Source of the DNA: Auanema rhodensis
Taxonomy: Eukaryota; Animalia; Nematoda
NCBI GenBank assembly: GCA_964057225.1
Contig: OZ059896.1
Location: forward strand, 13,826,001-13,890,000
DNA length: 64,000 nucleotides
Reading direction: 5' to 3'
This document shows, piece by piece, positions 12,699 through 64,000 of the stretch. The notes under the pieces were generated by a model. That model was given only the letters and a program-made list of their open reading frames with translations. It was not told where the DNA came from and searched no databases. Every line of letters starts with the position of its first letter. The first letter of the stretch is position 1. The translations under genes and the position numbers were made by a program.

Positions 12699-14067
12699 AG
12701 GTTCCGCCGAGATTTGAACTCGGGTCGCAGGATTCAAAGTCCTGAGTGCTAACCGCTACACCACGGAACCGACGATTTAGATCAAAAAACTCCGCCTTGA
12801 CTATGTTCTTCAAGAAGATAGTTCAAGAAGAAACAAATTGACTAGTTGATAAAAATGAAAAAGTAGGTTCCGCCGAGATTTGAACTCGGGTCGCAGGATT
12901 CAAAGTCCTGAGTGCTAACCGCTACACCACGGAACCGACGATTTAGATCAAAAAACTCCGCCTTGACTATGTTCTTCAAGAAGATAGTTCAAGAAGAAAC
13001 AAATTGACTAGTTGATAAAAATGAAAAAGTAGGTTCCGCCGAGATTTGAACTCGGGTCGCAGGATTCAAAGTCCTGAGTGCTAACCGCTACACCACGGAA
13101 CCGACGATTTAGATCAAAAAACTCCGCCTTGACTATGTTCTTCAAGAAGATAGTTCAAGAAGAAACAAATTGACTAGTTGATAAAAATGAAAAAGTAGGT
13201 TCCGCCGAGATTTGAACTCGGGTCGCAGGATTCAAAGTCCTGAGTGCTAACCGCTACACCACGGAACCGACGATTTAGATCAAAAAACTCCGCCTTGTTT
13301 ATGTTCTTCAAGAAGATAGTTCAAGAAGAAACAAATTGACTAGTTGATAAAAATGAAAAAGTAGGTTCCGCCGAGATTTGAACTCGGGTCGCAGGATTCA
13401 AAGTCCTGAGTGCTAACCGCTACACCACGGAACCGACGATTTAGATCAAAAGACTCCGCCTTGACTATTTTCTTCAAGAAGATAGTTCAAGAAGATACAA
13501 ATTGACCAACTGATAAAAATGAAAAAGTAGGTTCCGCCGAGATTTGAACTCGGGTCGCAGGATTCAAAGTCCTGAGTGCTAACCGCTACACCACGGAACC
13601 GACGATTTAGATCAAAAGACTCCGCCTTGACTATGTTCTTCAAGAAGATAGTTCAAGAAGAAACAAATTGACTAGTTGATAAAAATGAAAAAGTAGGTTC
13701 CGCCGAGATTTGAACTCGGGTCGCAGGATTCAAAGTCCTGAGTGCTAACCGCTACACCACGGAACCGACGATTTAGATCAAAAAACTCCGCCTTGACTAT
13801 TTTCTTCAAGAAGATAGTTCAAGAAGATACAAATTGACCAACTGATAAAAATGAAAAAGTAGGTTCCGCCGAGATTTGAACTCGGGTCGCAGGATTCAGA
13901 GTCCTGAGTGCTAACCGCTACACCACGGAACCGACGATTTAGATCAAAAGACTCCGCCTTGTTTATGTTCTTCAAGAAGATAGTTCAAGAAGAAACAAAT
14001 TGACCAACTGATAAAAAATGAAAAAGTAGGTTCCGCCGAGATTTGAACTCGGGTCGCAGGATTCAGA
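12699..14067 (-). tRNA. Inverted block of tRNA-Gln tandem array: 8 complete genes (left coordinates 12699, 12865, 13031, 13197, 13363, 13529, 13695 = TTG; 13861 = CTG) plus one 5'-truncated CTG copy (14028-14067)
   Basis: Reverse complement of GGTTCCGTGGTGTAGCGGTTAGCACTCAGGACT(C/T)TGAATCCTGCGACCCGAGTTCAAATCTCGGCGGAACCT at 166-bp spacing. Confidence 0.96.
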
Positions 14068-14249
14068 CGTTTCATATCGTTTCTTCACGTCTTTTCATGG
14101 TCGGAAGATATATGTACTTCTACCTTGTTCCTTAGGTAGGCAGACCCGAACGCCCCCATTTCCTTATTAAGACAAATACTTAAAGAGAAAAGGATTTATT
14201 ATCAGATAACAAGAAAATACATTAAAAAAGAATAAAAAAAGTATTACAT
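14068..14249. mobile_element. 182-bp unique linker at the inversion breakpoint; truncated, diverged relative of the 337-bp element
   Basis: Begins CGTTTCATATCG..TTCACGTC versus CGTTCCGTTATG..CTCACGTC in the element; ~120-135 nt in, ACTTAAAGAGAAAAGGATTTATTAT versus ACTTGAGAAAGAAAGGTTTATTAT at the same offset. Confidence 0.5.
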
Positions 14250-14326
14250 AGTTGGTCAATTTCTTTCTTCTTGAACTATCTTCTTGAAGAACATAGTCAA
14301 GGCGGAGTATTTTGATCTAAATTGTC

Positions 14327-14398
14327 GGTTCCGTGGTGTAGCGGTTAGCACTCAGGACTCTGAATCCTGCGACCCGAGTTCAAATCTCGGCGGAACCT
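14327..14398 (+). tRNA. tRNA-Gln(CTG), first + strand copy (representative unit)
   Basis: 72-nt cloverleaf: acceptor GGTTCCG/CGGAACC, D arm GTGT/GCAC, anticodon stem CAGGA/TCCTG with CT-CTG-AA loop, T stem CCGAG/CTCGG; A box TGGTGTAGCGG, B box GTTCAAATC; no encoded CCA. Confidence 0.97.
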
Positions 14399-14400
14399 AC

Positions 14401-14414
14401 TTTTTCATTTTTTA
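14401..14414 (+). terminator. Pol III terminator T5 followed by a second T run (present in essentially every unit)
   Basis: AC-TTTTT-CA-TTTTT(T) immediately after each tRNA; the second run varies in length and explains 166 vs 167-bp units. Confidence 0.85.
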
Positions 14415-17400
14415 TCAGTTGGTCAATTTGTTTCTTATTGAACTATCTTCTTGAAGAACATAGTCAAGGCGGAGTATTTTGATCTAAATTGTCGGTTCCG
14501 TGGTGTAGCGGTTAGCACTCAGGACTCTGAATCCTGCGACCCGAGTTCAAATCTCGGCGGAACCTACTTTTTCATTTTTATCAGTTGGTCAATTTGTTTC
14601 TTCTTGAACTATCTTCTTGAAGAACATAGTCAACGGGGAGTATTTTGATCTAAATCGTCGGTTCCGTGGTGTAGCGGTTAGCACTCAGGACTCTGAATCC
14701 TGCGACCCGAGTTCAAATCTCGGCGGAACCTACTTTTTCATTTTTATCAGTTGGTCAATTTGTTTCTTCCTGAACTATCTTCTTGAAGAACATAGTCAAG
14801 GCGGAGTCTTTTGATCTAAATCGTCGGTTCCGTGGTGTAGCGGTTAGCACTCAGGACTTTGAATCCTGCGACCCGAGTTCAAATCTCGGCGGAACCTACT
14901 TTTTCATTTTTTATCAGTTGGTCAATTTCTTTCTTCTTGAACTATCTTCTTGAAGAACATAGTCAAGGCGGAGTATTTTGATCTAAATTGTCGGTTCCGT
15001 GGTGTAGCGGTTAGCACTCAGGACTCTGAATCCTGCGACCCGAGTTCAAATCTCGGCGGAACCTACTTTTTCATTTTTATCAGTTGGTCAATTTGTTTCT
15101 TCTTGAACTATCTTCTTGAAGAAAATAGTCAAGGCGGAGTCTTTTGATCGAAATCGTCGGTTCCGTGGTGTAGCGGTTAGCACTCAGGACTTTGAATCCT
15201 GCGACCCGAGTTCAAATCTCGGCGGAACCTACTTTTTCATTTTTATCAGTTGGTCAATTTGTATCTTCTTGAACTATCTTCTTGAAGAACATAGTCAAGG
15301 CGGAGTATTTTGATCTAAATTGTCGGTTCCGTGGTGTAGCGGTTAGCACTCAGGACTTTGAATCCTGCGACCCGAGTTCAAATCTCGGCGGAACCTACTT
15401 TTTCATTTTTTATCAGTTGGTCAATTTGTTTCTTATTGAACTATCTTCTTGAAGAACATAGTCAAGGCGGAGTCTTTTGATCTAAATCGTCGGTTCCGTG
15501 GTGTAGCGGTTAGCACTCAGGACTTTGAATCCTGCGACCCGAGTTCAAATCTCGGCGGAACCTACTTTTTCATTTTTATCAGTTGGTCAATTTGTATCTT
15601 CTTGAACTATCTTCTTGAAGAAAATAGTCAAGGCGGAGTCTTTTGATCGAAATCGTCGGTTCCGTGGTGTAGCGGTTAGCACTCAGGACTTTGAATCCTG
15701 CGACCCGAGTTCAAATCTCGGCGGAACCTACTTTTTCATTTTTTATCAGTTGGTCAATTTGTTTCTTATTGAACTATCTTCTTGAAGAACATAGTCAAGG
15801 CGGAGTATTTTGATCTAAATTGTCGGTTCCGTGGTGTAGCGGTTAGCACTCAGGACTCTGAATCCTGCGACCCGAGTTCAAATCTCGGCGGAACCTACTT
15901 TTTCATTTTTATCAGTTGGTCAATTTGTTTCTTCTTGAACTATCTTCTTGAAGAAAATAGTCAAGGCGGAGTCTTTTGATCGAAATCGTCGGTTCCGTGG
16001 TGTAGCGGTTAGCACTCAGGACTTTGAATCCTGCGACCCGAGTTCAAATCTCGGCGGAACCTACTTTTTCATTTTTATCAGTTGGTCAATTTGTATCTTC
16101 TTGAACTATCTTCTTGAAGAACATAGTCAAGGCGGAGTATTTTGATCTAAATTGTCGGTTCCGTGGTGTAGCGGTTAGCACTCAGGACTTTGAATCCTGC
16201 GACCCGAGTTCAAATCTCGGCGGAACCTACTTTTTCATTTTTTATCAGTTGGTCAATTTGTTTCTTATTGAACTATCTTCTTGAAGAACATAGTCAAGGC
16301 GGAGTATTTTGATCTAAATTGTCGGTTCCGTGGTGTAGCGGTTAGCACTCAGGACTCTGAATCCTGCGACCCGAGTTCAAATCTCGGCGGGACCTACTTT
16401 TTCATTTTTATCAGTTGGTCAATTTGTTTCTTCCTGAACTATCTTCTTGAAGAAAATAGTCAAGGCGGAGTCTTTTGATCGAAATCGTCGGTTCCGTGGT
16501 GTAGCGGTTAGCACTCAGGACTTTGAATCCTGCGACCCGAGTTCAAATCTCGGCGGAACCTACTTTTTCATTTTTTATCAGTTGGTCAATTTGTTTCTTA
16601 TTGAACTATCTTCTTGAAGAACATAGTCAAGGCGGAGTATTTTGATCTAAATTGTCGGTTCCGTGGTGTAGCGGTTAGCACTCAGGACTCTGAATCCTGC
16701 GACCCGAGTTCAAATCTCGGCGGAACCTACTTTTTCATTTTTATCAGTTGGTCAATTTGTTTCTTCTTGAACTATCTTCTTGAAGAACATAGTCAACGGG
16801 GAGTATTTTGATCTAAATCGTCGGTTCCGTGGTGTAGCGGTTAGCACTCAGGACTCTGAATCCTGCGACCCGAGTTCAAATCTCGGCGGGACCTACTTTT
16901 TCATTTTTATCAGTTGGTCAATTTGTTTCTTCCTGAACTATCTTCTTGAAGAACATAGTCAAGGCGGAGTCTTTTGATCTAAATTGTCGGTTCCGTGGTG
17001 TAGCGGTTAGCACTCAGTACTCTGAATCCTGCGACCCGAGTTCAAATCTCGGCGGAACCTACTTTTTCATTTTTATCAGTTGGTCAATTTGTTTCTTCTT
17101 GAACTATCTTCTTGAAGAACATAGTCAAGGCGGAGTTTTTTGATCTAAATCGTCGGTTCCGTGGTGTAGCGGTTAGCACTCAGGACTCTGAATCCTGCGA
17201 CCCGAGTTCAAATCTCGGCGGAACCTACTTTTTCATTTTTTATCAGTTGGTCAATTTGTTTCTTATTGAACTATCTTCTTGAAGAACATAGTCAAGGCGG
17301 AGTCTTTTGATCTAAATCGTCGGTTCCGTGGTGTAGCGGTTAGCACTCAGGACTCTGAATCCTGCGACCCGAGTTCAAATCTCGGCGGAACCTACTTTTT

Positions 17401-20400
17401 CATTTTTATCAGTTGGTCAATTTGTATCTTCTTGAACTATCTTCTTGAAGAAAATAGTCAAGGCGGAGTCTTTTGATCTAAATCGTCGGTTCCGTGGTGT
17501 AGCGGTTAGCACTCAGGACTTTGAATCCTGCGACCCGAGTTCAAATCTCGGCGGAACCTACTTTTTCATTTTTATCAGTTGGTCAATTTGTATCTTCTTG
17601 AACTATCTTCTTGAAGAAAATAGTCAAGGCGGAGTCTTTTGATCGAAATCGTCGGTTCCGTGGTGTAGCGGTTAGCACTCAGGACTTTGAATCCTGCGAC
17701 CCGAGTTCAAATCTCGGCGGAACCTACTTTTTCATTTTTTATCAGTTGGTCAATTTGTTTCTTATTGAACTATCTTCTTGAAGAACATAGTCAAGGCGGA
17801 GTATTTTGATCTAAATTGTCGGTTCCGTGGTGTAGCGGTTAGCACTCAGGACTCTGAATCCTGCGACCCGAGTTCAAATCTCGGCGGAACCTACTTTTTC
17901 ATTTTTATCAGTTGGTCAATTTGTATCTTCTTGAACTATCTTCTTGAAGAAAATAGTCAAGGCGGAGTATTTTGATCTAAATTGTCGGTTCCGTGGTGTA
18001 GCGGTTAGCACTCAGGACTCTGAATCCTGCGACCCGAGTTCAAATCTCGGCGGAACCTACTTTTTCATTTTTATCAGTTGGTCAATTTGTATCTTCTTGA
18101 ACTATCTTCTTGAAGAAAATAGTCAAGGCGGAGTCTTTTGATCTAAATCGTCGGTTCCGTGGTGTAGCGGTTAGCACTCAGGACTTTGAATCCTGCGACC
18201 CGAGTTCAAATCTCGGCGGAACCTACTTTTTCATTTTTATCAGTTGGTCAATTTGTATCTTCTTGAACTATCTTCTTGAAGAAAATAGTCAAGGCGGAGT
18301 CTTTTGATCTAAATCGTCGGTTCCGTGGTGTAGCGGTTAGCACTCAGGACTTTGAATCCTGCGACCCGAGTTCAAATCTCGGCGGAACCTACTTTTTCAT
18401 TTTTATCAGTTGGTCAATTTGTATCTTCTTGAACTATCTTCTTGAAGAAAATAGTCAAGGCGGAGTCTTTTGATCGAAATCGTCGGTTCCGTGGTGTAGC
18501 GGTTAGCACTCAGGACTTTGAATCCTGCGACCCGAGTTCAAATCTCGGCGGGACCTACTTTTTCATTTTTATCAGTTGGTCAATTTGTTTCTTCCTGAAC
18601 TATCTTCTTGAAGAAAATAGTCAAGGCGGAGTCTTTTGATCGAAATCGTCGGTTCCGTGGTGTAGCGGTTAGCACTCAGGACTTTGAATCCTGCGACCCG
18701 AGTTCAAATCTCGGCGGAACCTACTTTTTCATTTTTTATCAGTTGGTCAATTTGTTTCTTCTTGAACTATCTTCTTGAAGAACATAGTCAACGGGGAGTA
18801 TTTTGATCTAAATCGTCGGTTCCGTGGTGTAGCGGTTAGCACTCAGGACTCTGAATCCTGCGACCCGAGTTCAAATCTCGGCGGGACCTACTTTTTCATT
18901 TTTATCAGTTGGTCAATTTGTTTCTTCCTGAACTATCTTCTTGAAGAACATAGTCAAGGCGGAGTCTTTTGATCTAAATTGTCGGTTCCGTGGTGTAGCG
19001 GTTAGCACTCAGTACTCTGAATCCTGCGACCCGAGTTCAAATCTCGGCGGAACCTACTTTTTCATTTTTATCAGTTGGTCAATTTGTTTCTTCTTGAACT
19101 ATCTTCTTGAAGAACATAGTCAAGGCGGAGTTTTTTGATCTAAATCGTCGGTTCCGTGGTGTAGCGGTTAGCACTCAGGACTCTGAATCCTGCGACCCGA
19201 GTTCAAATCTCGGCGGAACCTACTTTTTCATTTTTTATCAGTTGGTCAATTTGTTTCTTATTGAACTATCTTCTTGAAGAACATAGTCAAGGCGGAGTCT
19301 TTTGATCTAAATCGTCGGTTCCGTGGTGTAGCGGTTAGCACTCAGGACTCTGAATCCTGCGACCCGAGTTCAAATCTCGGCGGAACCTACTTTTTCATTT
19401 TTATCAGTTGGTCAATTTGTATCTTCTTGAACTATCTTCTTGAAGAAAATAGTCAAGGCGGAGTCTTTTGATCTAAATCGTCGTTTCCGTGGTGTAGCGG
19501 TTAGCACTCAGGACTTTGAATCCTGCGACCCGAGTTCAAATCTCGGCGGAACCTACTTTTTCATTTTTATCAGTTGGTCAATTTGTATCTTCTTGAACTA
19601 TCTTCTTGAAGAAAATAGTCAAGGCGGAGTCTTTTGATCGAAATCGTCGGTTCCGTGGTGTAGCGGTTAGCACTCAGGACTTTGAATCCTGCGACCCGAG
19701 TTCAAATCTCGGCGGAACCTACTTTTTCATTTTTTATCAGTTGGTCAATTTGTTTCTTATTGAACTATCTTCTTGAAGAACATAGTCAAGGCGGAGTATT
19801 TTGATCTAAATTGTCGGTTCCGTGGTGTAGCGGTTAGCACTCAGGACTCTGAATCCTGCGACCCGAGTTCAAATCTCGGCGGAACCTACTTTTTCATTTT
19901 TATCAGTTGGTCAATTTGTATCTTCTTGAACTATCTTCTTGAAGAAAATAGTCAAGGCGGAGTATTTTGATCTAAATTGTCGGTTCCGTGGTGTAGCGGT
20001 TAGCACTCAGGACTCTGAATCCTGCGACCCGAGTTCAAATCTCGGCGGAACCTACTTTTTCATTTTTATCAGTTGGTCAATTTGTATCTTCTTGAACTAT
20101 CTTCTTGAAGAAAATAGTCAAGGCGGAGTCTTTTGATCTAAATCGTCGGTTCCGTGGTGTAGCGGTTAGCACTCAGGACTTTGAATCCTGCGACCCGAGT
20201 TCAAATCTCGGCGGAACCTACTTTTTCATTTTTATCAGTTGGTCAATTTGTATCTTCTTGAACTATCTTCTTGAAGAAAATAGTCAAGGCGGAGTCTTTT
20301 GATCTAAATCGTCGGTTCCGTGGTGTAGCGGTTAGCACTCAGGACTTTGAATCCTGCGACCCGAGTTCAAATCTCGGCGGAACCTACTTTTTCATTTTTA

Positions 20401-23400
20401 TCAGTTGGTCAATTTGTATCTTCTTGAACTATCTTCTTGAAGAAAATAGTCAAGGCGGAGTCTTTTGATCGAAATCGTCGGTTCCGTGGTGTAGCGGTTA
20501 GCACTCAGGACTTTGAATCCTGCGACCCGAGTTCAAATCTCGGCGGGACCTACTTTTTCATTTTTATCAGTTGGTCAATTTGTTTCTTCCTGAACTATCT
20601 TCTTGAAGAAAATAGTCAAGGCGGAGTCTTTTGATCGAAATCGTCGGTTCCGTGGTGTAGCGGTTAGCACTCAGGACTTTGAATCCTGCGACCCGAGTTC
20701 AAATCTCGGCGGAACCTACTTTTTCATTTTTTATCAGTTGGTCAATTTGTTTCTTATTGAACTATCTTCTTGAAGAACATAGTCAAGGCGGAGTATTTTG
20801 ATCTAAATTGTCGGTTCCGTGGTGTAGCGGTTAGCACTCAGGACTCTGAATCCTGCGACCCGAGTTCAAATCTCGGCGGAACCTACTTTTTCATTTTTAT
20901 CAGTTGGTCAATTTGTTTCTTCTTGAACTATCTTCTTGAAGAACATAGTCAACGGGGAGTATTTTGATCTAAATCGTCGGTTCCGTGGTGTAGCGGTTAG
21001 CACTCAGGACTCTGAATCCTGCGACCCGAGTTCAAATCTCGGCGGGACCTACTTTTTCATTTTTATCAGTTGGTCAATTTGTTTCTTCCTGAACTATCTT
21101 CTTGAAGAACATAGTCAAGGCGGAGTCTTTTGATCTAAATTGTCGGTTCCGTGGTGTAGCGGTTAGCACTCAGTACTCTGAATCCTGCGACCCGAGTTCA
21201 AATCTCGGCGGAACCTACTTTTTCATTTTTATCAGTTGGTCAATTTGTTTCTTCTTGAACTATCTTCTTGAAGAACATAGTCAAGGCGGAGTTTTTTGAT
21301 CTAAATCGTCGGTTCCGTGGTGTAGCGGTTAGCACTCAGGACTCTGAATCCTGCGACCCGAGTTCAAATCTCGGCGGAACCTACTTTTTCATTTTTTATC
21401 AGTTGGTCAATTTGTTTCTTATTGAACTATCTTCTTGAAGAACATAGTCAAGGCGGAGTCTTTTGATCTAAATCGTCGGTTCCGTGGTGTAGCGGTTAGC
21501 ACTCAGTACTCTGAATCCTGCGACCCGAGTTCAAATCTCGGCGGAACCTACTTTTTCATTTTTATCAGTTGGTCAATTTGTATCTTCTTGAACTATCTTC
21601 TTGAAGAAAATAGTCAAGGCGGAGTCTTTTGATCGAAATCGTCGGTTCCGTGGTGTAGCGGTTAGCACTCAGGACTTTGAATCCTGCGACCCGAGTTCAA
21701 ATCTCGGCGGAACCTACTTTTTCATTTTTTATCAGTTGGTCAATTTGTTTCTTATTGAACTATCTTCTTGAAGAACATAGTCAAGGCGGAGTATTTTGAT
21801 CTAAATTGTCGGTTCCGTGGTGTAGCGGTTAGCACTCAGGACTCTGAATCCTGCGACCCGAGTTCAAATCTCGGCGGAACCTACTTTTTCATTTTTATCA
21901 GTTGGTCAATTTGTATCTTCTTGAACTATCTTCTTGAAGAAAATAGTCAAGGCGGAGTATTTTGATCTAAATTGTCGGTTCCGTGGTGTAGCGGTTAGCA
22001 CTCAGGACTCTGAATCCTGCGACCCGAGTTCAAATCTCGGCGGAACCTACTTTTTCATTTTTATCAGTTGGTCAATTTGTATCTTCTTGAACTATCTTCT
22101 TGAAGAAAATAGTCAAGGCGGAGTCTTTTGATCTAAATCGTCGGTTCCGTGGTGTAGCGGTTAGCACTCAGGACTTTGAATCCTGCGACCCGAGTTCAAA
22201 TCTCGGCGGAACCTACTTTTTCATTTTTATCAGTTGGTCAATTTGTATCTTCTTGAACTATCTTCTTGAAGAAAATAGTCAAGGCGGAGTCTTTTGATCT
22301 AAATCGTCGGTTCCGTGGTGTAGCGGTTAGCACTCAGGACTTTGAATCCTGCGACCCGAGTTCAAATCTCGGCGGAACCTACTTTTTCATTTTTATCAGT
22401 TGGTCAATTTGTATCTTCTTGAACTATCTTCTTGAAGAAAATAGTCAAGGCGGAGTCTTTTGATCGAAATCGTCGGTTCCGTGGTGTAGCGGTTAGCACT
22501 CAGGACTTTGAATCCTGCGACCCGAGTTCAAATCTCGGCGGAACCTACTTTTTCATTTTTTATCAGTTGGTCAATTTGTTTCTTATTGAACTATCTTCTT
22601 GAAGAACATAGTCAAGGCGGAGTATTTTGATCTAAATTGTCGGTTCCGTGGTGTAGCGGTTAGCACTCAGGACTCTGAATCCTGCGACCCGAGTTCAAAT
22701 CTCGGCGGAACCTACTTTTTCATTTTTATCAGTTGGTCAATTTGTATCTTCTTGAACTATCTTCTTGAAGAAAATAGTCAAGGCGGAGTCTTTTGATCGA
22801 AATCGTCGGTTCCGTGGTGTAGCGGTTAGCACTCAGGACTTTGAATCCTGCGACCCGAGTTCAAATCTCGGCGTAACCTACTTTTTCATTTTTTATCAGT
22901 TGGTCAATTTGTTTCTTATTGAACTATCTTCTTGAAGAACATAGTCAAGGCGGAGTATTTTGATCTAAATCGTCGGTTCCGTGGTGTAGCGGTTAGCACT
23001 CAGGACTCTGAATCCTGCGACCCGAGTTCAAATCTCGGCGGAACCTACTTTTTCATTTTGATCAACTAGTCGATTTGTTTCTTCTTGAACTATCTTCTTG
23101 AAGAACATAGTCAAGGCGGAGTTTTTTGATCTAAATCGTCGGTTCCGTGGTGTAGCGGTTAGCACTCAGGACTTTGAATCCTGCGACCCGAGTTCAAATC
23201 TCGGCGGAACCTACTTTTTCATTTTTATCAGTTGGTCAATTTGTATCTTCTTGAACTATCTTCTTGAAGAAAATAGTCAAGGCGGAGTCTTTTGATCTAA
23301 ATCGTCGGTTCCGTGGTGTAGCGGTTAGCACTCAGGACTTTGAATCCTGCGACCCGAGTTCAAATCTCGGCGGAACCTACTTTTTCATTTTTATCAGTTG

Positions 23401-27396: not shown

Positions 27397-27640
27397 TGTG
27401 GCGTTATACCGCAAGTGTATAGTATGGTTGGAAATAAAACACAAAGCGAATATGTAGAAAAGGGTTTATTGATGAATTAACAAGACAAGCACGGAATAGA
27501 ATCACTGACTGCGAACGTTAAAAAATGTAAGACTGATCTCTTCTCGTGGGCGGTCGTCAGCCTGAAACAAAGAGTTAGTCATGCCACATGTATAACACAA
27601 CATGTGGTATGGATAAAAATTACTTAGGAAGTTAGAAGAA

Positions 27641-27699
<59 letters not shown>

Positions 27700-27763
27700 A
27701 GAAACAAATAAAACAATTGTTGAAGATAAAAAAATTATACAAACTCACTCGCTTATCGCGACA
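27397..27763 (-). repeat. 3' LTR of copy 1 (367 bp, contains (GA)n tract)
   Basis: Direct repeat of 36812-37180; apparently differs only by 2 bp in the (GA)n tract. Confidence 0.96.
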
Positions 27764-36808: not shown

Positions 36809-36811
36809 ATT

Positions 36812-51988: not shown

Positions 51989-52261
51989 TTTTGTTGTAGA
52001 TGTAGGAATAATGCTTATATTCCTTTTTTGTTTTCTTTTTTCTTTGTTTGTTTGGTGATCACAGTATATGTGAACGTAAGGAAATTGAAACCTCTGTTTC
52101 TAATTTCAGAGTTTGCTTATTGTTCAAGTCTGTTTGGTGTGACTTGACGTGGACTTATGATCGCCACGATTTTTATTAAGTATGTTTTTTGCACAAACAC
52201 GCTTGGTTCGACTTGTATCTCACCTGCCACGCGGGACTTAAAGCGGCTAAGATCTAAACTA

Positions 52262-52273
52262 GCCGATGCACCA
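52262..52273 (-). promoter_or_regulatory. Primer-binding site (tRNA-Gly-GCC) of copy 2
   Basis: GCCGATGCACCA on the + strand, 3 nt from the 5' LTR. Confidence 0.88.
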
Positions 52274-52276
52274 ATT

Positions 52277-52623
52277 TGTGGCAATATACCACAAGTGTAT
52301 AGTATGGTTGGAAGTAAAACACAAAGCGAATATGTAGAAAAGGGTTTATTGATGAATTAACAAGACAAGCACGGAATAAAATCACTGACTGCGAACGTTG
52401 AAGATGTAAGACTGATCTCTTCTCGTGGGCGGTCGTCAGCCTGAAACAAAGAGTTAGTCATGCCACATGTATAACACAACATGTGGTATGGATAAAAATT
52501 ACTTAGGAAGTTACAAGAAAGAAGAAAGAAGAGAGAGAGAGAGAGAGAGGGAGAGAACAGGAGAGACAAATAAAACAATTGTTGAAGATAAAATTTATAC
52601 AAACTCACTCGCTTATCGCGACA
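52277..52623 (-). repeat. 5' LTR of copy 2 (347 bp)
   Basis: Direct repeat of 42871-43217, adjacent to the PBS. Confidence 0.96.
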
Positions 52624-55600
52624 AACGGGGAGTCTTTTGATCTAAATCGTCGGTTCCGTGGTGTAGCGGTTAGCACTCAGGACTCTGAATCCTGCGACCC
52701 GAGTTCAAATATCGGCGGAACCTACTTTTTCATTTTGATCAACTAGTCAATTTGTTTCTTCTTGAACTATCTTCTTGAAGAACATAGTCAAGGCGGAGTT
52801 TTTTGATCTAAATCGTCGGTTCCGTGGTGTAGCGGTTAGCACTCAGGACTCTGAATCCTGCGACCCGAGTTCAAATCTCGGCGGAACCTAGTTTTTCATT
52901 TTTATCAGTTGGTCAATTTGTTTCTTCTTGAACTATCTTCTTGAAGAACATAGTCAACGGGGAGTCTTTTGATCTAAATCGTCGGTTCCGTGGTGTAGCG
53001 GTTAGCACTCAGGACTCTGAATCCTGCGACCCGAGTTCAAATCTCGGCGGAACCTACTTTTTCATTTTGATCAGTTGGTCAATTTGTTTCTTCTTGAACT
53101 ATCTTCTTGAAGAACATAGTCAACGGGGAGTCTTTTGATCTAAATCGTCGGTTCCGTGGTGTAGCGGTTAGCACTCAGGACTCTGAATCCTGCGACCCGA
53201 GTTCAAATATCGGCGGAACCTACTTTTTCATTTTGATCAACTAGTCAATTTGTTTCTTCTTGAACTATCTTCTTGAAGAACATAGTCAAGGCGGAGTTTT
53301 TTGATCTAAATCGTCGGTTCCGTGGTGTAGCGGTTAGCACTCAGGACTCTGAATCCTGCGACCCGAGTTCAAATCTCGGCGGAACCTACTTTTTCATTTT
53401 TATCAGTTGGTCAATTTGTTTCTTCTTGAACTATCTTCTTGAAGAAAATAGTCAAGGCGGAGTCTTTTGATCTAAATCGTCGGTTCCGTGGTGTAGCGGT
53501 TAGCACTCAGGACTCTGAATCCTGCGACCCGAGTTCAAATCTCGGCGGAACCTAGTTTTTCATTTTTATCAGTTGGTCAATTTGTTTCTTCTTGAACTAT
53601 CTTCTTGAAGAACATAGTCAACGGGGAGTCTTTTGATCTAAATCGTCGGTTCCGTGGTGTAGCGGTTAGCACTCAGGACTCTGAATCCTGCGACCCGAGT
53701 TCAAATCTCGGCGGAACCTACTTTTTCATTTTGATCAGTTGGTCAATTTGTTTCTTCTTGAACTATCTTCTTGAAGAACATAGTCAACGGGGAGTCTTTT
53801 GATCTAAATCGTCGGTTCCGTGGTGTAGCGGTTAACACTCAGGACTCTGAATCCTGCGACCCGAGTTCAAATATCGGCGGAACCTACTTTTTCATTTTGA
53901 TCAACTAGTCAATTTGTTTCTTCTTGAACTATCTTCTTGAAGAACATAAACAAGGCGGAGTCTTTTGATCTAAATCGTCGGTTCCGTGGTGTAGCGGTTA
54001 GCACTCAGGACTCTGAATCCTGCGACCCGAGTTCAAATATCGGCGGAACCTACTTTTTCATTTTGATCAACTAGTCAATTTGTTTCTTCTTGAACTATCT
54101 TCTTGAAGAACATAAACAAGGCGGAGTCTTTTGATCTAAATCGTCGGTTCCGTGGTGTAGCGGTTAGCACTCAGGACTCTGAATCCTGCGACCCGAGTTC
54201 AAATCTCGGCGGAACCTACTTTTTCATTTTGATCAACTAGTCAATTTGTTTCTTCTTGAACTATCTTCTTGAAGAAAATAGTCAAGGCGGAGTCTATTGA
54301 TCTAAATCGTCGGTTCCGTGGTGTAGCGGTTAGCACTCAGGACTCTGAATCCTGCGACCCGAGTTCAAATCTCGGCGGAACCTACTTTTTCTTTTTGATC
54401 AACTAGTCAATTTGTTTCTTCTTGAACTATCTTCTTGAAGAACATAAACAAGGCGGAGTCTTTTGATCTAAATCGTCGGTTCCGTGGTGTAGCGGTTAGC
54501 ACTCAGGACTCTGAATCCTGCGACCCGAGTTCAAATCTCGGCGGAACCTACTTTTTCATTTTTATCAGTTGGTCAATTTGTATCTTCTTGAACTATCTTC
54601 TTGAAGAAAATAGTCAAGGCGGAGTATTTTGATCTAAATCGTCGGTTCCGTGGTGTAGCGGTCAGCACTCAGGACTCTGAATCCTGCGACCCGAGTTCAA
54701 ATCTCGGCGGAACCTACTTTTTCATTTTTATCAGTTGGTCAATTTGTATCTTCTTGATCTATCTTCTTGAAGAAAATAGTCAAGGCGGAGTATTTTGATC
54801 TAAATCGTCGGTTCCGTGGTGTAGCGGTTAGCACTCAGGACTCTGAATCCTGCGACCCGAGTTCAAATCTCGGCGGAACCTACTTTTTCATTTTGATCAG
54901 TTGGTCAATTTGTTTCTTCTTGAACTATCTTCTTGAAGAACATAGTCAACGGGGAGTCTTTTGATCTAAATCGTCGGTTCCGTGGTGTAGCGGTTAGCAC
55001 TCAGGACTCTGAATCCTGCGACCCGAGTTCAAATATCGGCGGAACCTACTTTTTCATTTTGATCAACTAGTCAATTTGTTTCTTCTTGAACTATCTTCTT
55101 GAAGAACATAGTCAAGGCGGAGTTTTTTGATCTAAATCGTCGGTTCCGTGGTGTAGCGGTTAGCACTCAGGACTCTGAATCCTGCGACCCGAGTTCAAAT
55201 CTCGGCGGAACCTACTTTTTCATTTTTATCAGTTGGTCAATTTGTTTCTTCTTGAACTATCTTCTTGAAGAAAATAGTCAAGGCGGAGTCTTTTGATCTA
55301 AATCGTCGGTTCCGTGGTGTAGCGGTTAGCACTCAGGACTCTGAATCCTGCGACCCGAGTTCAAATCTCGGCGGAACCTAGTTTTTCATTTTTATCAGTT
55401 GGTCAATTTGTTTCTTCTTGAACTATCTTCTTGAAGAACATAGTCAACGGGGAGTCTTTTGATCTAAATCGTCGGTTCCGTGGTGTAGCGGTTAGCACTC
55501 AGGACTCTGAATCCTGCGACCCGAGTTCAAATCTCGGCGGAACCTACTTTTTCATTTTGATCAGTTGGTCAATTTGTTTCTTCTTGAACTATCTTCTTGA

Positions 55601-58600
55601 AGAACATAGTCAACGGGGAGTCTTTTGATCTAAATCGTCGGTTCCGTGGTGTAGCGGTTAGCACTCAGGACTCTGAATCCTGCGACCCGAGTTCAAATAT
55701 CGGCGGAACCTACTTTTTCATTTTGATCAACTAGTCAATTTGTTTCTTCTTGAACTATCTTCTTGAAGAACATAAACAAGGCGGAGTCTTTTGATCTAAA
55801 TCGTCGGTTCCGTGGTGTAGCGGTTAGCACTCAGGACTCTGAATCCTGCGACCCGAGTTCAAATCTCGGCGGAACCTACTTTTTCATTTTTATCAGTTGG
55901 TCAATTTGTATCTTCTTGATCTATCTTCTTGAAGAAAATAGTCAAGGCGGAGTCTTTTGATCTAAATCGTCGGTTCCGTGGTGTAGCGGTTAGCACTCAG
56001 GACTCTGAATCCTGCGACCCGAGTTCAAATCTCGGCGGAACCTACTTTTTCTTTTTGATCAACTAGTCAATTTGTTTCTTCTTGAACTATCTTCTTGAAG
56101 AACATAAACAAGGCGGAGTCTTTTGATCTAAATCGTCGGTTCCGTGGTGTAGCGGTTAGCACTCAGGACTCTGAATCCTGCGACCCGAGTTCAAATCTCG
56201 GCGGAACCTACTTTTTCATTTTTATCAGTTGGTCAATTTGTATCTTCTTGAACTATCTTCTTGAAGAAAATAGTCAAGGCGGAGTATTTTGATCTAAATC
56301 GTCGGTTCCGTGGTGTAGCGGTCAGCACTCAGGACTCTGAATCCTGCGACCCGAGTTCAAATCTCGGCGGAACCTACTTTTTCATTTTTATCAGTTGGTC
56401 AATTTGTATCTTCTTGATCTATCTTCTTGAAGAAAATAGTCAAGGCGGAGTCTTTTGATCTAAATCGTCGGTTCCGTGGTGTAGCGGTTAGCACTCAGGA
56501 CTCTGAATCCTGCGACCCGAGTTCAAATCTCGGCGGAACCTACTTTTTCTTTTTGATCAACTAGTCAATTTGTTTCTTCTTGAACTATCTTCTTGAAGAA
56601 CATAAACAAGGCGGAGTCTTTTGATCTAAATCGTCGGTTCCGTGGTGTAGCGGTTAGCACTCAGGACTCTGAATCCTGCGACCCGAGTTCAAATCTCGGC
56701 GGAACCTACTTTTTCATTTTTATCAGTTGGTCAATTTGTATCTTCTTGAACTATCTTCTTGAAGAAAATAGTCAAGGCGGAGTATTTTGATCTAAATCGT
56801 CGGTTCCGTGGTGTAGCGGTCAGCACTCAGGACTCTGAATCCTGCGACCCGAGTTCAAATCTCGGCGGAACCTACTTTTTCATTTTTATCAGTTGGTCAA
56901 TTTGTTTCTTCCTGAACTATCTTCTTGAAGAACATAGTCAAGGCGGAGTATTTTGATCTAAATCGTCGGTTCCGTGGTGTAGCGGTTAGCACTCAGGACT
57001 CTGAATCCTGCGACCCGAGTTCAAATCTCGGCGGAACCTACTTTTTCATTTTGATCAACTAGTCAATTTGTTTCTTCTTGAACTATCTTCTTGAAGAAAA
57101 TAGTCAAGGCGGAGTCTTTTGATCTAAATCGTCGGTTCCGTGGTGTAGCGGTTAGCACTCAGGACTCTGAATCCTGCGACCCGAGTTCAAATCTCGGCGG
57201 AACCTACTTTTTCTTTTTGATCAACTAGTCAATTTGTTTCTTCTTGAACTATCTTCTTGAAGAACATAAACAAGGCGGAGTCTTTTGATCTAAATCGTCG
57301 GTTCCGTGGTGTAGCGGTTAGCACTCAGGACTCTGAATCCTGCGACCCGAGTTCAAATCTCGGCGGAACCTACTTTTTCATTTTTATCAGTTGGTCAATT
57401 TGTTTCTTCCTGAACTATCTTCTTGAAGAACATAGTCAAGGCGGAGTCTTTTGATCTAAATCGTCGGTTCCGTGGTGTAGCGGTTAGCACTCAGGACTCT
57501 GAATCCTGCGACCCGAGTTCAAATCTCGGCGGAACCTACTTTTTCATTTTTATCAGTTGGTCAATTTGTTTCTTCTTGAACTATCTTCTTGAAGAACATA
57601 GTCAAGGCGGAGTTTTTTGATCTAAATCGTCGGTTCCGTGGTGTAGCGGTTAGCACTCAGGACTCTGAATCCTGCGACCCGAGTTCAAATCTCGGCGGAA
57701 CCTACTTTTTCATTTTGATCAACTAGTCAATTTGTTTCTTCTTGAACTATCTTCTTGAAGAACATAGTCAAGGCGGAGTTTTTTGATCTAAATCGTCGGT
57801 TCCGTGGTGTAGCGGTTAGCACTCAGGACTCTGAATCCTGCGACCCGAGTTCAAATCTCGGCGGAACCTACTTTTTCATTTTGATCAACTAGTCAATTTG
57901 TTTCTTCTTGAACTATCTTCTTGAAGAACATAAACAAGGCGGAGTCTTTTGATCTAAATCGTCGGTTCCGTGGTGTAGCGGTTAGCACTCAGGACTCTGA
58001 ATCCTGCGACCCGAGTTCAAATCTCGGCGGAACCTACTTTTTCTTTTTGATCAACTAGTCAATTTGTTTCTTCTTGAACTATCTTCTTGAAGAAAATAGT
58101 CAAGGCGGAGTATTTTGATCTAAATCGTCGGTTCCGTGGTGTAGCGGTTAGCACTCAGGACTCTGAATCCTGCGACCCGAGTTCAAATCTCGGCGGAACC
58201 TACTTTTTCATTTTTATCAGTTGGTCAATTTGTATCTTCTTGAACTATCTTCTTGAAGAAAATAGTCAAGGCGGAGTATTTTGATCTAAATCGTCGGTTC
58301 CGTGGTGTAGCGGTTAGCACTCAGGACTCTGAATCCTGCGACCCGAGTTCAAATCTCGGCGGAACCTACTTTTTCATTTTTATCAGTTGGTCAATTTGTA
58401 TCTTCTTGAACTATCTTCTTGAAGAAAATAGTCAAGGCGGAGTATTTTGATCTAAATCGTCGGTTCCGTGGTGTAGCGGTTAGCACTCAGGACTCTGAAT
58501 CCTGCGACCCGAGTTCAAATCTCGGCGGAACCTACTTTTTCATTTTGATCAACTAGTCAATTTGTTTCTTCTTGATTTATCTTCTTGAAGAAAATAGTCA

Positions 58601-59764
58601 AGGCGGAGTCTTTTGATCTAAATCGTCGATTCCGTGGTGTAGCGGTTAGCACTCAGGACTCTGAATCCTGCGACCCGAGTTCAAATCTCGGCGGAACCTA
58701 CTTTTTCTTTTTGATCAACTAGTCAATTTGTTTCTTCTTGAACTATCTTCTTGAAGAACATAAACAAGGCGGAGTCTTTTGATCTAAATCGTCGGTTCCG
58801 TGGTGTAGCGGTTAGCACTCAGGACTCTGAATCCTGCGACCCGAGTTCAAATCTCGGCGGAACCTACTTTTTCATTTTTATCAGTTGGTCAATTTGTTTC
58901 TTCTTGAACTATCTTCTTGAAGAAAATAGTCAAGGCGGAGTCTTTTGATCTAAATCGTCGGTTCCGTGGTGTAGCGGTTAGCACTCAGGACTCTGAATCC
59001 TGCGACCCGAGTTCAAATCTCGGCGGAACCTACTTTTTCATTTTGATCAACTAGTCAATTTGTTTCTTCTTGAACTATCTTCTTGAAGAACATAAACAAG
59101 GCGGAGTCTTTTGATCTAAATCGTCGGTTCCGTGGTGTAGCGGTTAGCACTCAGGACTCTGAATCCTGCGACCCGAGTTCAAATCTCGGCGGAACCTACT
59201 TTTTCTTTTTGATCAACTAGTCAATTTGTTTCTTCCTGAACTATCTTCTTGAAGAACATAGTCAAGGTGGAGTCTTTTGATCTAAATCGTCGGTTCCGTG
59301 GTGTAGCGGTTAGCACTCAGGACTTTGAATCCTGCGACCCGAGTTCAAATCTCGGCGGAACCTACTTTTTCATTTTTATCAGTTGGTCAATTTGTTTCTT
59401 CCTGAACTATCTTTTTGAAGAACATAGTCAAGGCGGAGTCTTTTGATCTAAATCGTCGGTTCCGTGGTGTAGCGGTTAGCACTCAGGACTCTGAATCCTG
59501 CGACCCGAGTTCAAATCTCGGCGGAACCTACTTTTTCATTTTTATCAGTTGGTCAATTTGTTTCTTCTTGAACTATCTTCTTGAAGAACATAGTCAAGGC
59601 GGAGTTGTTTGATCTAAATCGTCGGTTCCGTGGTGTAGCGGTTAGCACTCAGGACTCTGAATCCTGCGACCCGAGTTCAAATCTCGGCGGAACCTACTTT
59701 TTCATTTTTATCAGTTTGTCAATTTGTTTCTTCTTGAACTTTCTTCTTGAAGAACATAGTCAAG
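52624..59764 (+). tRNA. tRNA-Gln tandem array block 3: ~43 genes (52652 to 59695), nearly all CTG
   Basis: 6972 bp between first and last gene starts = 42 x 166. Confidence 0.96.
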
Positions 59765-60101
59765 CGTTCCGTTATGCTCTCACGTCGATTCTATAGACCA
59801 ATAAAGCCTACAAGATGAGTGTGATAGTATTCCAGATGTAGCGGTACATAAATAGCTTAATGGATAAACATAAGACTTGAGAAAGAAAGGTTTATTATGT
59901 CTACATGATTACAATAAGTTATAAAAGTCTGCATAAAGATATAAAGTGAAAGAGAGCTAAGAAAGGAAGACCAACCATCCATAGTCATTCCATAAGGCAA
60001 AGCTGAAGTCTGTGTTCCATATGAAGGGCGTGTCGTCCTCTCTCAGCCTCATGTTGTCTGATTCTAACCCGCCTGCTACGTATTGATTTCCGAATGGAAC
60101 G
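59765..60101. mobile_element. 337-bp non-coding insertion (solo-LTR-like or MITE), TSD CAAG, termini CGTTCC...GGAACG; further copies start at 60272, 60945, 61452, 61959, 62632, 63305 and 63812 (last one cut by the window end)
   Basis: Empty site CATAGT-CAAG-GCGGAG; filled site CATAGT-CAAG-[CGTTCCGTT...AATGGAACG]-CAAG-GCGGAG. The minus strand has a pyrimidine-rich tract, TTGTAA and AATAAA arranged as in an LTR R region. Confidence 0.82.
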
Positions 60102-63100
60102 CAAGGCGGAGTCTTTTGATCTAAATCGTCGGTTCCGTGGTGTAGCGGTTAGCACTCAGGACTTTGAATCCTGCGACCCGAGTTCAAATCTCGGCGGAAC
60201 CTACTTTTTCATTTTTATCAGTTGGTCAATTTGTTTCTTCTTGAACTTTCTTCTTGAAGAACATAGTCAAGCGTTCCGTTATGCTCTCACGTCGATCCTA
60301 TAGACCAATAAAGCCTACAAGATGAGTGTGATAGTATTCCAGATGTAGCGGTACATAAATAGCTTAATGGATAAACATAAGACTTGAGAAAGAAAGGTTT
60401 ATTATGTCTACATGATTACAATAAGTTATAAAGGTCTGCATAAAGATATAAAGTGAAAGAGAGCTAAGAAAGGAAGACCAACCATCCATAGTCATTCCAT
60501 AAGGCAAAGCTGAAGTCTGTGTTCCATATGAAGGGCGTGTCGTCCTCTCTCAGCCTCATGTTGTCTGATTCTAACCCGCCTGCTACGTATTGATTCCCGA
60601 ATGGAACGCAAGGCGGAGTCTTTTGATCTAAATCGTCGGTTCCGTGGTGTAGCGGTTAGCACTCAGGACTTTGAATCCTGCGACCCGAGTTCAAATCTCG
60701 GCGGAACCTACTTTTTCATTTTTATCAGTTGGTCAATTTGTTTCTTCTTAAACTATCTACTTGAAGAACATAGTCAAGACGGAGTTTTTTGATCTAAATC
60801 GTCGGTTCCGTGGTGTAGCGGTTAGCACTCAGGACTTTGAATCCTGCGACCCGAGTTCAAATCTCGGCGGAACCTACTTTTTCATTTTTATCAGTTGGTC
60901 AATTTGTTTCTTCTTGAACTTTCTTCTTGAAGAACATAGTCAAGCGTTCCGTTATGCTCTCACGTCGATCCTATAGACCAATAAAGCCTACAAGATGAGT
61001 GTGATAGTATTCCAGATGTAGCGGTACATAAATAGCTTAATGGATAAACATAAGACTTGAGAAAGAAAGGTTTATTATGTCTACATGATTACAATAAGTT
61101 ATAAAAGTCTGCATAAAGATATAAAGTGAAAGAGAGCTAAGAAAGGAAGACCAACCATCCATAGTCATTCCATAAGGCAAAGCTGAAGTCTGTGTTCCAT
61201 ATGAAGGGCGTGTCGTCCTCTCTCAGCCTCATGTTGTCTGATTCTAACCCGCCTGCTACGTATTGATTTCCGAATGGAACGCAAGGCGGAGTCTTTTGAT
61301 CTAAATCGTCGGTTCCGTGGTGTAGCGGTTAGCACTCAGGACTTTGAATCCTGCGACCCGAGTTCAAATCTCGGCGGAACCTACTTTTTCATTTTTATCA
61401 GTTGGTCAATTTGTTTCTTCTTGAACTTTCTTCTTGAAGAACATAGTCAAGCGTTCCGTTATGCTCTCACGTCGATCCTATAGACCAATAAAGCCTACAA
61501 GATGAGTGTGATAGTATTCCAGATGTAGCGGTACATAAATAGCTTAATGGATAAACATAAGACTTGAGAAAGAAAGGTTTATTATGTCTACATGATTACA
61601 ATAAGTTATAAAAGTCTGCATAAAGATATAAAGTGAAAGAGAGCTAAGAAAGGAAGACCAACCATCCATAGTCATTCCATAAGGCAAAGCTGAAGTCTGT
61701 GTTCCATATGAAGGGCGTGTCGTCCTCTCTCAGCCTCATGTTGTCTGATTCTAACCCGCCTGCTACGTATTGATTTCCGAATGGAACGCAAGGCGGAGTC
61801 TTTTGATCTAAATCGTCGGTTCCGTGGTGTAGCGGTTAGCACTCAGGACTTTGAATCCTGCGACCCGAGTTCAAATCTCGGCGGAACCTACTTTTTCATT
61901 TTTATCAGTTGGTCAATTTGTTTCTTCTTGAACTTTCTTCTTGAAGAACATAGTCAAGCGTTCCGTTATGCTCTCACGTCGATCCTATAGACCAATAAAG
62001 CCTACAAGATGAGTGTGATAGTATTCCAGATGTAGCGGTACATAAATAGCTTAATGGATAAACATAAGACTTGAGAAAGAAAGGTTTATTATGTCTACAT
62101 GATTACAATAAGTTATAAAGGTCTGCATAAAGATATAAAGTGAAAGAGAGCTAAGAAAGGAAGACCAACCATCCATAGTCATTCCATAAGGCAAAGCTGA
62201 AGTCTGTGTTCCATATGAAGGGCGTGTCGTCCTCTCTCAGCCTCATGTTGTCTGATTCTAACCCGCCTGCTACGTATTGATTCCCGAATGGAACGCAAGG
62301 CGGAGTCTTTTGATCTAAATCGTCGGTTCCGTGGTGTAGCGGTTAGCACTCAGGACTTTGAATCCTGCGACCCGAGTTCAAATCTCGGCGGAACCTACTT
62401 TTTCATTTTTATCAGTTGGTCAATTTGTTTCTTCTTAAACTATCTACTTGAAGAACATAGTCAAGACGGAGTTTTTTGATCTAAATCGTCGGTTCCGTGG
62501 TGTAGCGGTTAGCACTCAGGACTTTGAATCCTGCGACCCGAGTTCAAATCTCGGCGGAACCTACTTTTTCATTTTTATCAGTTGGTCAATTTGTTTCTTC
62601 TTGAACTTTCTTCTTGAAGAACATAGTCAAGCGTTCCGTTATGCTCTCACGTCGATCCTATAGACCAATAAAGCCTACAAGATGAGTGTGATAGTATTCC
62701 AGATGTAGCGGTACATAAATAGCTTAATGGATAAACATAAGACTTGAGAAAGAAAGGTTTATTATGTCTACATGATTACAATAAGTTATAAAGGTCTGCA
62801 TAAAGATATAAAGTGAAAGAGAGCTAAGAAAGGAAGACCAACCATCCATAGTCATTCCATAAGGCAAAGCTGAAGTCTGTGTTCCATATGAAGGGCGTGT
62901 CGTCCTCTCTCAGCCTCATGTTGTCTGATTCTAACCCGCCTGCTACGTATTGATTCCCGAATGGAACGCAAGGCGGAGTCTTTTGATCTAAATCGTCGGT
63001 TCCGTGGTGTAGCGGTTAGCACTCAGGACTTTGAATCCTGCGACCCGAGTTCAAATCTCGGCGGAACCTACTTTTTCATTTTTATCAGTTGGTCAACTTG

Positions 63101-64000
63101 TTTCTTCTTAATCTATCTACTTGAAGAACATAGTCAAGGCGAAGTTTTTTGATCTAAATCGTCGGTTCCGTGGTGTAGCGGTTAGCACTCAGGACTTTGA
63201 ATCCTGCGACCCGAGTTCAAATCTCGGCGGAACCTACTTTTTCATTTTTATCAGTTGGTCAATTTGTTTCTTCTTGAACTTTCTTCTTGAAGAACATAGT
63301 CAAGCGTTCCGTTATGCTCTCACGTCGATCCTATAGACCAATAAAGCCTACAAGATGAGTGTGATAGTATTCCAGATGTAGCGGTACATAAATAGCTTAA
63401 TGGATAAACATAAGACTTGAGAAAGAAAGGTTTATTATGTCTACATGATTACAATAAGTTATAAAAGTCTGCATAAAGATATAAAGTGAAAGAGAGCTAA
63501 GAAAGGAAGACCAACCATCCATAGTCATTCCATAAGGCAAAGCTGAAGTCTGTGTTCCATATGAAGGGCGTGTCGTCCTCTCTCAGCCTCATGTTGTCTG
63601 ATTCTAACCCGCCTGCTACTTATTGATTCCCGAATGGAACGCAAGGCGGAGTCTTTTGATCTAAATCGTCGGTTCCGTGGTGTAGCGGTTAGCACTCAGG
63701 ACTTTGAATCCTGCGACCCGAGTTCAAATCTCGGCGGAACCTACTTTTTCATTTTTATCAGTTTGTCAATTTGTTTCTTCTTGAACTTTCTTCTTGAAGA
63801 ACATAGTCAAGCGTTCCGTTATGCTCTCACGTCGATCCTATAGACCAATAAAGCCTACAAGATGAGTGTGATAGTATTCCAGATGTAGCGGTACATAAAT
63901 AGCTTAATGGATAAACATAAGACTTGAGAAAGAAAGGTTTATTATGTCTACATGATTACAATAAGTTATAAAAGTCTGCATAAAGATATAAAGTGAAAGA
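59765..64000 (+). repeat. Composite tandem array block 4: 507-bp (tRNA + insertion) and 673-bp (2 tRNA + insertion) units; 10 tRNA-Gln(TTG) genes at 60131, 60638, 60804, 61311, 61818, 62325, 62491, 62998, 63164, 63671
   Basis: Insertion start spacings 507, 673, 507, 507, 673, 673, 507; all anticodons read TTG; continues past the window end. Confidence 0.94.

What the first reader, a model, noticed from the sequence alone, without database searches (positions are those of the whole stretch)
12699..64000. Satellite-scale tandem array of ~174 tRNA-Gln genes in a minimal 166-bp unit
Seen: 8 + 79 + 34 + 43 + 10 full-length genes, each with A box, B box and oligo-T terminator and only ~94 bp of spacer, and the array runs past the window end. 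Known: nematode tRNA genes are normally dispersed, with tens of copies per amino acid, whereas large tRNA arrays are best known from Entamoeba and a few vertebrate loci. Inference: this far exceeds plausible translational need, and the period is close to one nucleosome repeat. The array may therefore act structurally (TFIIIC/condensin platform, boundary, pairing or heterochromatin element) or as a source of tRNA fragments.
Basis: partly seen in the sequence, partly recalled or inferred. Interest (0 to 1): 0.85.

Follow-up and report, generated by a model that had tools for sequence, protein, structure and literature searches.

The report
Tandem tRNA-Gln array in Auanema nematode
A roundworm of the genus Auanema carries at least 174 glutamine tRNA genes packed head to tail; the genes are still kept intact, most likely by selection on the tRNA itself, and such arrays have already been reported in this genus.

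Summary
In detail: 174 full-length tRNA-Gln genes (114 CTG, 60 TTG) in five blocks, with a 166-167 bp unit. It is not one clean array. Two ~9.8-kb BEL/Pao-type LTR elements fill 38% of the span, the first block is inverted, and the last block has a 507-bp unit carrying a 337-bp insert. The flanking lad-2-like gene places the host in Auanema, probably A. rhodense (not proven). A 2026 preprint on that species reports 19,554 tRNA loci and tandem tRNA arrays in germline-restricted DNA. Gene bodies are about 11 times less diverse than spacers (0 of 71 versus 16 of 94 sites with common variants; neutral simulations P<=0.004). The only common body variant is the wobble base, which keeps Gln identity. 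Sites outside the A/B boxes are as conserved as the boxes. This argues against an inert satellite and fits selection on the tRNA product better than a pure TFIIIC platform. Best reading: a lineage-specific, recombining array of working Pol III genes whose copy number drifts. No canonical elimination motif lies between lad-2 and the array, so germline restriction is untested. New member of a known kind.

The parts
12699..13932 (-). Block 1: 8 tRNA-Gln genes (7 TTG, 1 CTG), 166-bp unit, inverted relative to the rest
12642..12698 (-). 3' flank of the outermost gene; resembles the array spacer but lacks 28 nt (ancestral flank or decayed unit)
14028..14067 (-). 3' half gene (positions 33-72), cut in the anticodon loop at the inversion junction
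14068..14249 (.). Unique ~180-bp segment between the two divergent blocks; no Rfam family reaches threshold
14327..27366 (+). Block 2: 79 tRNA-Gln genes (39 CTG, 40 TTG), 166/167-bp unit, local higher-order repeats of 7, 12 and 24-25 units
27397..37180 (-). LTR element 1 (BEL/Pao type with phlebovirus-like Gc). LTRs 27397-27763 and 36812-37180 identical except 2 nt of an AG run; 5-bp target duplication AATTT; sits in a spacer. Polyprotein frame interrupted by a frameshift near 36280
37250..42799 (+). Block 3: 34 tRNA-Gln genes (32 CTG, 2 TTG); 9-unit higher-order repeat
42871..52623 (-). LTR element 2 (95.5% identical to element 1). LTRs 42871-43217 and 52277-52623 are 100% identical; 5-bp target duplication AACGG; open 2643-aa polyprotein 44057-51988 and a 170-aa Cys/His-rich ORF 43248-43760
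52652..59695 (+). Block 4: 43 tRNA-Gln genes (42 CTG, 1 TTG); 11-unit higher-order repeat
59765..60101 (.). First of 8 copies (the last cut by the window end) of a 337-bp MITE-like insert: 9-bp terminal inverted repeat with one mismatch, flanked by a CAAG direct repeat, 29 bp upstream of the next gene; copies at least 99% identical
60131..63742 (+). Block 5: 10 tRNA-Gln-TTG genes in mixed 507-bp (insert-bearing) and 166-bp units; continues past the window end
405..9666 (+). Flanking single-copy L1CAM/neuroglian-family (lad-2-like) gene; used only to place the host

Best explanation
This is a lineage-specific tandem array of working tRNA-Gln genes in an Auanema genome. Each 166-bp unit is a self-contained Pol III type-2 gene: short 5' flank, internal A and B boxes, T5 terminator (shown as sequence; transcription inferred). 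The unit was amplified by unequal exchange and block duplication, with recombination between copies (higher-order repeats and four-gamete failures shown; mechanism inferred). New mutations hit bodies and spacers at similar density, but only spacer variants and the Gln-preserving wobble change spread through the array. So purifying selection acts, or recently acted, on the tRNA product (pattern shown; cause inferred). The copy number itself most likely drifts in a genome that tolerates very large repeat blocks, rather than being tuned to need (inferred). Transposons land in the spacers and can be co-amplified.
For: Diversity 0.0046 in bodies (without position 34) versus 0.055 in spacers, permutation p=4e-5; common variants 0/71 versus 16/94, p=8e-5. 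Rare variants are equally dense, 8/71 versus 15/94, p=0.5; common-versus-rare test p=0.012; non-box sites alone 0/48, p=0.001. Neutral duplication-deletion simulations give this pattern in at most 0.4% of runs. No change at anticodon positions 35-36 in 174 copies; 146 are perfect, 12 carry only harmless-looking changes. Single-copy relatives differ by compensatory stem pairs. 53 of 120 spacer site pairs fail the four-gamete test; 70 distinct unit haplotypes; block repeats of 7-25 units. No tRNA in 5.4 kb past the syntenic gene of A. sp. JU1783. A. rhodense has 19,554 tRNA loci, only 215 called pseudogenes (bioRxiv 10.64898/2026.08.27.747507).
Against: No expression or Pol III data. Selection is leaky: a B-box/T-stem-breaking variant reached 8 of 77 copies in blocks 3-4. 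It is unexplained why selection is effective on such redundant copies. Conversion from functional tRNA-Gln genes elsewhere could give a similar pattern. The simulation assumes one mutation rate across the unit. The host species is not proven.
Confidence: 0.6

Rival explanations
1. Germline-restricted dosage array: the block lies in DNA eliminated from somatic cells and its copy number is adaptive, supplying tRNA-Gln to oocytes or early embryos.
For: A. rhodense eliminates about 61% of its genome, including tandem tRNA, 5S and U2 arrays; an earlier short-read assembly had about 500 tRNA loci against 19,554 now. Two young full-length LTR elements here; transposon genes are common in eliminated DNA and rare (about 0.9% of genes) in retained DNA. 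Selection on the product is shown.
Against: No GGC-N3/4-GCC palindrome of the Oscheius type between lad-2 and the array; the only match in the window is inside an LTR element. tRNA density here is 43% per 10 kb, whereas the preprint says eliminated ncRNA arrays stay below 20%; only block 5 (17%) fits. The preprint's authors regard repeat build-up in eliminated DNA as a by-product.
Confidence: 0.17
2. Mostly silent, neutrally drifting tRNA-derived satellite whose bodies are kept clean by gene conversion from functional tRNA-Gln genes elsewhere.
For: Only the body is shared with outside donors, so conversion would spare the spacer. Broken copies are amplified locally (16 of 174). In the Arabidopsis 81-gene array, copy number is judged neutral and some genes are non-functional (PMC2886086).
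Against: The anticodon allele is linked to upstream spacer variants (r2 0.16-0.28), at or above the background for those distances (0.08-0.23). Frequent overwriting from outside should erase that. A plain neutral array is rejected.
Confidence: 0.12
3. Structural element: a TFIIIC/condensin platform, boundary or pairing site with nucleosome-length spacing.
For: Dense B boxes at the edge of a gene-rich region. Unit length is nearly fixed: one 1-bp indel against 35 substitution alleles in the spacer; 507 bp is about three units. The preprint speculates on pairing-centre roles for repeat blocks.
Against: Acceptor stem, anticodon arm and variable loop are as conserved as the boxes, which TFIIIC binding alone does not require. 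The most frequent stem-breaking variant hits the B box. Large insertions and an inversion are tolerated, and the array is missing in a congener.
Confidence: 0.08
4. Assembly artefact: a few real copies over-expanded.
For: Read depth could not be checked.
Against: 70 distinct unit haplotypes, regional differences in anticodon and spacer type, nested block duplications, and LTR insertions with correct target duplications. False expansion would give identical copies.
Confidence: 0.03

Closest known systems
Tandem tRNA arrays of Auanema rhodense (bioRxiv 10.64898/2026.08.27.747507)
   Same: Same genus and possibly the same genome; tandemly repeated, mostly intact tRNA genes; reported repeat units of 167-504 nt bracket the 166/167 and 507 bp seen here.
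   Different: The text I could read names no isotype, unit or selection analysis (tables are images). It gives below 20% ncRNA density in eliminated arrays versus 43% here, and no canonical elimination motif was found here.
Arabidopsis thaliana 81-gene tRNA array (PMC2886086)
   Same: Local tandem array among ordinary genes, unequal crossing-over, concerted evolution, copy number differing between sister species, some non-functional copies.
   Different: Three-gene unit there; single-gene 166-bp unit here, at least twice as many genes, with two isoacceptors segregating on one backbone.
Entamoeba tRNA arrays (PMC2652664)
   Same: Long tandem arrays of short tRNA-bearing units.
   Different: Up to 5 genes per unit, short tandem repeats in the spacers (E. 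histolytica, E. dispar), genus-wide and holding nearly all tRNA genes; here one isotype, a plain spacer, absent at the syntenic site in a congener.
Large tDNA clusters of Nematostella and teleost fishes (PMC2888827)
   Same: Animal genomes with 17,000-20,000 tRNA loci and clusters of 50 or more.
   Different: Those clusters are mostly heterogeneous in Nematostella and zebrafish; this one is all Gln.
Atlas-type belpaoviruses of nematodes (PMC9094657; PDB 7A4A) - for the two LTR inserts only
   Same: Single polyprotein with Pao peptidase, DUF1759, DUF5641, integrase zinc domain and phlebovirus-like Gc; best PDB hit 7A4A, E=1e-20.
   Different: Distant relative; no tree was built, so the subgroup is not assigned.

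Membership tests
Functional eukaryotic tRNA gene (Pol III type 2) | Full cloverleaf with standard pairs and a cognate anticodon | tested here: met
   158 of 174 copies keep all stem pairs; Rfam 65.8-67.3 bits; fold -26 kcal/mol
Functional eukaryotic tRNA gene (Pol III type 2) | A box, B box and oligo-T terminator | tested here: met
   A box invariant; B box intact in 166 of 174; T5 at +3 in all
Functional eukaryotic tRNA gene (Pol III type 2) | Transcribed, processed and charged | not testable with these tools
   No RNA or ChIP data; only the indirect selection signal
Tandem tRNA gene array under concerted evolution | Head-to-tail near-identical units with block duplication and exchange | tested here: met
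   96-97% identity, higher-order repeats, 53 of 120 four-gamete failures
Tandem tRNA gene array under concerted evolution | Paralogues closer to each other than to the orthologous array of a sister species | tested here: inconclusive
   No orthologous array at the syntenic site in A. sp. JU1783; spacer not found in metagenome contigs
Inert tRNA-derived satellite | tRNA part decays as fast as the spacer | tested here: not met
   11-fold lower diversity in bodies; simulations P<=0.004
Germline-restricted (eliminated) repeat of rhabditid PDE | 29-bp palindromic elimination motif at the gene/repeat boundary | tested here: inconclusive
   No Oscheius-type GGC-N3/4-GCC motif at the boundary; the A. 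rhodense matrix was not available, so a diverged site is not excluded
Germline-restricted (eliminated) repeat of rhabditid PDE | Low somatic read depth and telomere-clipped reads at the border | not testable with these tools
   No reads
Entamoeba-type array | Multi-gene units with short tandem repeats between genes | tested here: not met
   Single-gene unit; only a 13-bp two-copy motif in the spacer
BEL/Pao LTR element (the two 9.8-kb inserts) | TG...CA LTRs, 5-bp target duplication, tRNA primer site, Pao peptidase/DUF1759/DUF5641 | tested here: met
   the primer site does not match tRNA-Gln
BEL/Pao LTR element (the two 9.8-kb inserts) | Placement in the reverse-transcriptase tree | not tested
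   No tree built; Pfam did not report the RT domain at E<=0.001

The most novel reading that the evidence does not exclude
The array is a germline-only, adaptively amplified tRNA-Gln locus: programmed DNA elimination is used as gene dosage control, giving the germline hundreds of working copies with a regionally tuned CTG/TTG mix that somatic cells discard.
Probability: 0.13. Interest if true: 0.78.

Novelty: new member of a known kind. Interest (0 to 1): 0.45.

Why it matters
Auanema appears to hold tens of times more tRNA genes than its relatives, and the published view is that its repeat blocks pile up where selection is weak. This locus shows that in at least one such array the tRNA sequence is still guarded while the spacer drifts. 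It offers a resolved system for asking how selection acts on hundreds of redundant genes, how two isoacceptors coexist on one backbone, and whether DNA elimination sets tRNA dosage. Spacer variants tag the copies, so activity per copy can be measured.

Tried and rejected
Exact look-ups of the element-2 polyprotein and ten other window ORFs found nothing, so the species could not be fixed directly. A spacer pattern had no match in metagenome contigs; the tRNA body matched two contigs, each with one copy. Rfam found nothing for the 337-bp insert or the inversion junction. Scans for an elimination motif and telomere repeats were negative; a partial look-alike near 14130-14155 has the wrong spacing. 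The preprint's tables and motif logo are images and could not be read. Targeting of the array by the LTR elements was not accepted: two spacer insertions in one orientation are within chance, and the primer site is not tRNA-Gln. The 507-bp unit as the ancestral form was judged less likely than an insertion, given the inverted ends and direct repeat. mascRNA and snoRNA hits are below threshold.
Full report
Observation. ARAGORN finds 174 tRNA-Gln genes between 12699 and 63742, in blocks of 8 (minus strand), 79, 34, 43 and 10. Rfam scores the copies scanned 65.8-67.3 bits against a cut-off of 29, and TRF gives a 166-bp period at 96-97% identity. Spacers are 94 bp (143 cases), 95 bp (20) or 435 bp (7). 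Every gene is followed by a T5 run, the A box is invariant, and the B box is intact in 166 copies. Both Gln anticodons occur, 114 CTG and 60 TTG. They are evenly mixed in block 2, almost all CTG in blocks 3-4 and all TTG in block 5.

The two 9.8-kb gaps are full-length LTR elements on the opposite strand, 95.5% identical to each other. Pfam finds Pao peptidase, DUF1759, DUF5641, an integrase zinc domain and phlebovirus G2 domains in the 2643-aa polyprotein of element 2. Its envelope region is closest to PDB 7A4A, E=1e-20, an entry cited in the paper on the nematode Atlas virus (PMC9094657). Each element sits in a spacer with a 5-bp target duplication and has identical or near-identical LTRs, so both are young. 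The frame of element 1 is interrupted by a frameshift near 36280. Together they make up 38% of the span. From 59765 on, a 337-bp insert with short inverted ends and a CAAG direct repeat has been amplified along with the gene, giving a 507-bp unit. Block 1 is inverted; it starts with a half gene cut in the anticodon loop and is separated from block 2 by about 180 unique bases.

Host. An exon of the flanking Ig/FN3 gene, searched by reference, is closest to Auanema sp. JU1783 among named proteins. The exons are about 75-96% identical to that species, DNA is about 70% identical across introns, and gene order is the same. The host is therefore a close congener of A. melissensis (JU1783) but not that species. 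A. rhodense is the likely candidate: its genome is 32.2% GC with 47-bp median introns, similar to the left flank, and it has a long-read germline assembly. Exact look-ups did not confirm this. The short-tailed L1CAM being lad-2 rather than sax-7 rests on my own knowledge of these genes. In JU1783 the contig continues with no tRNA for 5.4 kb past the syntenic downstream gene, so the array at this site is lineage-specific, with the caveat that this is a short-read assembly.

Real or artefact. There are 70 distinct unit haplotypes, block repeats of 7, 9, 11, 12 and 24-25 units, regional haplotype differences, and 53 of 120 spacer site pairs fail the four-gamete test. With the correct target duplications at the insertions, this is the record of a recombining array, not of a false expansion. 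Read depth could not be checked.

Selection. Leaving out position 34, body diversity is 0.0046 against 0.055 in the spacer (permutation p=4e-5). Variants at 5% or more occur at 0 of 71 body sites and 16 of 94 spacer sites (p=8e-5); collapsing linked sites gives p=0.001. Rare variants are about equally dense (8/71 versus 15/94, p=0.5), so a lower mutation rate in the body is not the evident cause. Neutral duplication-deletion simulations, with the most diverse body site dropped as in the data, gave the pattern in at most 0.4% of runs. The 48 body sites outside the A and B boxes are as conserved as the 23 box sites. The one common change is the wobble base, and positions 35-36 never change. Related single-copy genes differ by compensatory pairs. 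The constraint therefore looks like that on a working tRNA-Gln, not only on TFIIIC sites. It is leaky: 16 copies have a broken stem pair, and one B-box variant reached 8 of 77 copies in blocks 3-4. Conversion from outside donors could mimic selection, but the anticodon allele remains linked to upstream spacer variants at or above background, which weakens that rival.

How it most likely works. Each unit is a complete Pol III gene (sequence shown, transcription inferred). Unequal exchange and block duplication change copy number and spread or remove variants (products shown, mechanism inferred, as modelled for Arabidopsis in PMC2886086). Selection stops defective tRNA variants from taking over (pattern shown, cause inferred). 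The size of the array probably drifts in a genome tolerant of huge repeat blocks (inferred). Confidence 0.6.

Comparison with what is known. The A. rhodense preprint (10.64898/2026.08.27.747507) reports 19,554 tRNA loci, 215 of them pseudogenes, and tandem tRNA, 5S and U2 arrays in DNA eliminated from somatic cells. The earlier assembly had about 500 (PMC6469403). So large tRNA arrays in this genus are on record. Whether this array is eliminated is open. I found no Oscheius-type GGC-N3/4-GCC palindrome at the boundary, and its 43% tRNA density exceeds the below-20% stated for eliminated arrays. That points to retained DNA or to another assembly. The young transposons point the other way. Other known cases are Entamoeba, the Arabidopsis 81-gene array, and clusters of 50 or more in Nematostella and teleosts. 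It works like these tandem arrays; it fails the Entamoeba-type and inert-satellite tests.

Verdict. A real and striking array, a new member of a known kind, probably within an expansion already reported. What this analysis adds is the selection signal on the tRNA product, the two-anticodon mosaic and the insertion history. Interest 0.45.

Noticed in passing
window 27397-37180 and 42871-52623: Two young envelope-bearing BEL/Pao elements; they are about 99% identical over env and part of pol but about 90% over integrase/RNase H, which suggests recombination between subfamilies. Element 2 has an open polyprotein and identical LTRs.
   Followed up: partly
window 27794-28306 and 43248-43760 (minus strand): A separate 170-aa Cys/His-rich ORF between the polyprotein and the 3' LTR of both elements; no Pfam match.
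   Followed up: partly
window 59765-60101 and 7 further copies: 337-bp MITE-like insert. Read as a 4-bp CAAG duplication or a 2-bp AA duplication; family unknown. It lies 29 bp upstream of the gene, within one base of the distance at which element 2 inserted (28 bp).
   Followed up: partly
window 14068-14249: Unique segment at the inversion junction, with a GC-rich patch near 14130-14160 that partly resembles a telomere-like or elimination motif but has the wrong spacing.
   Followed up: partly
window 14327-27366: The anticodon allele is linked to upstream spacer variants but hardly to downstream ones, suggesting that exchanges resolve in the 3' half of the gene.
   Followed up: partly
array spacer, e.g. 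window 14268-14292: Two TTCnnGAA cores 13 bp apart, resembling heat-shock elements; may be chance.
   Followed up: no
window 4200-6190 (minus strand): A gene nested in a lad-2 intron on the opposite strand, also present in A. sp. JU1783 (L005).
   Followed up: no
window 9900-12240 (minus strand): Fast-evolving gene next to the array, weakly matching a 616-aa gene at the same position in A. sp. JU1783.
   Followed up: partly
L001/L002 (Logan SRR23622349, SRR23622334): A lad-2 locus of a related nematode at 53% GC, with a plexin gene downstream and no tRNA; species not identified.
   Followed up: no
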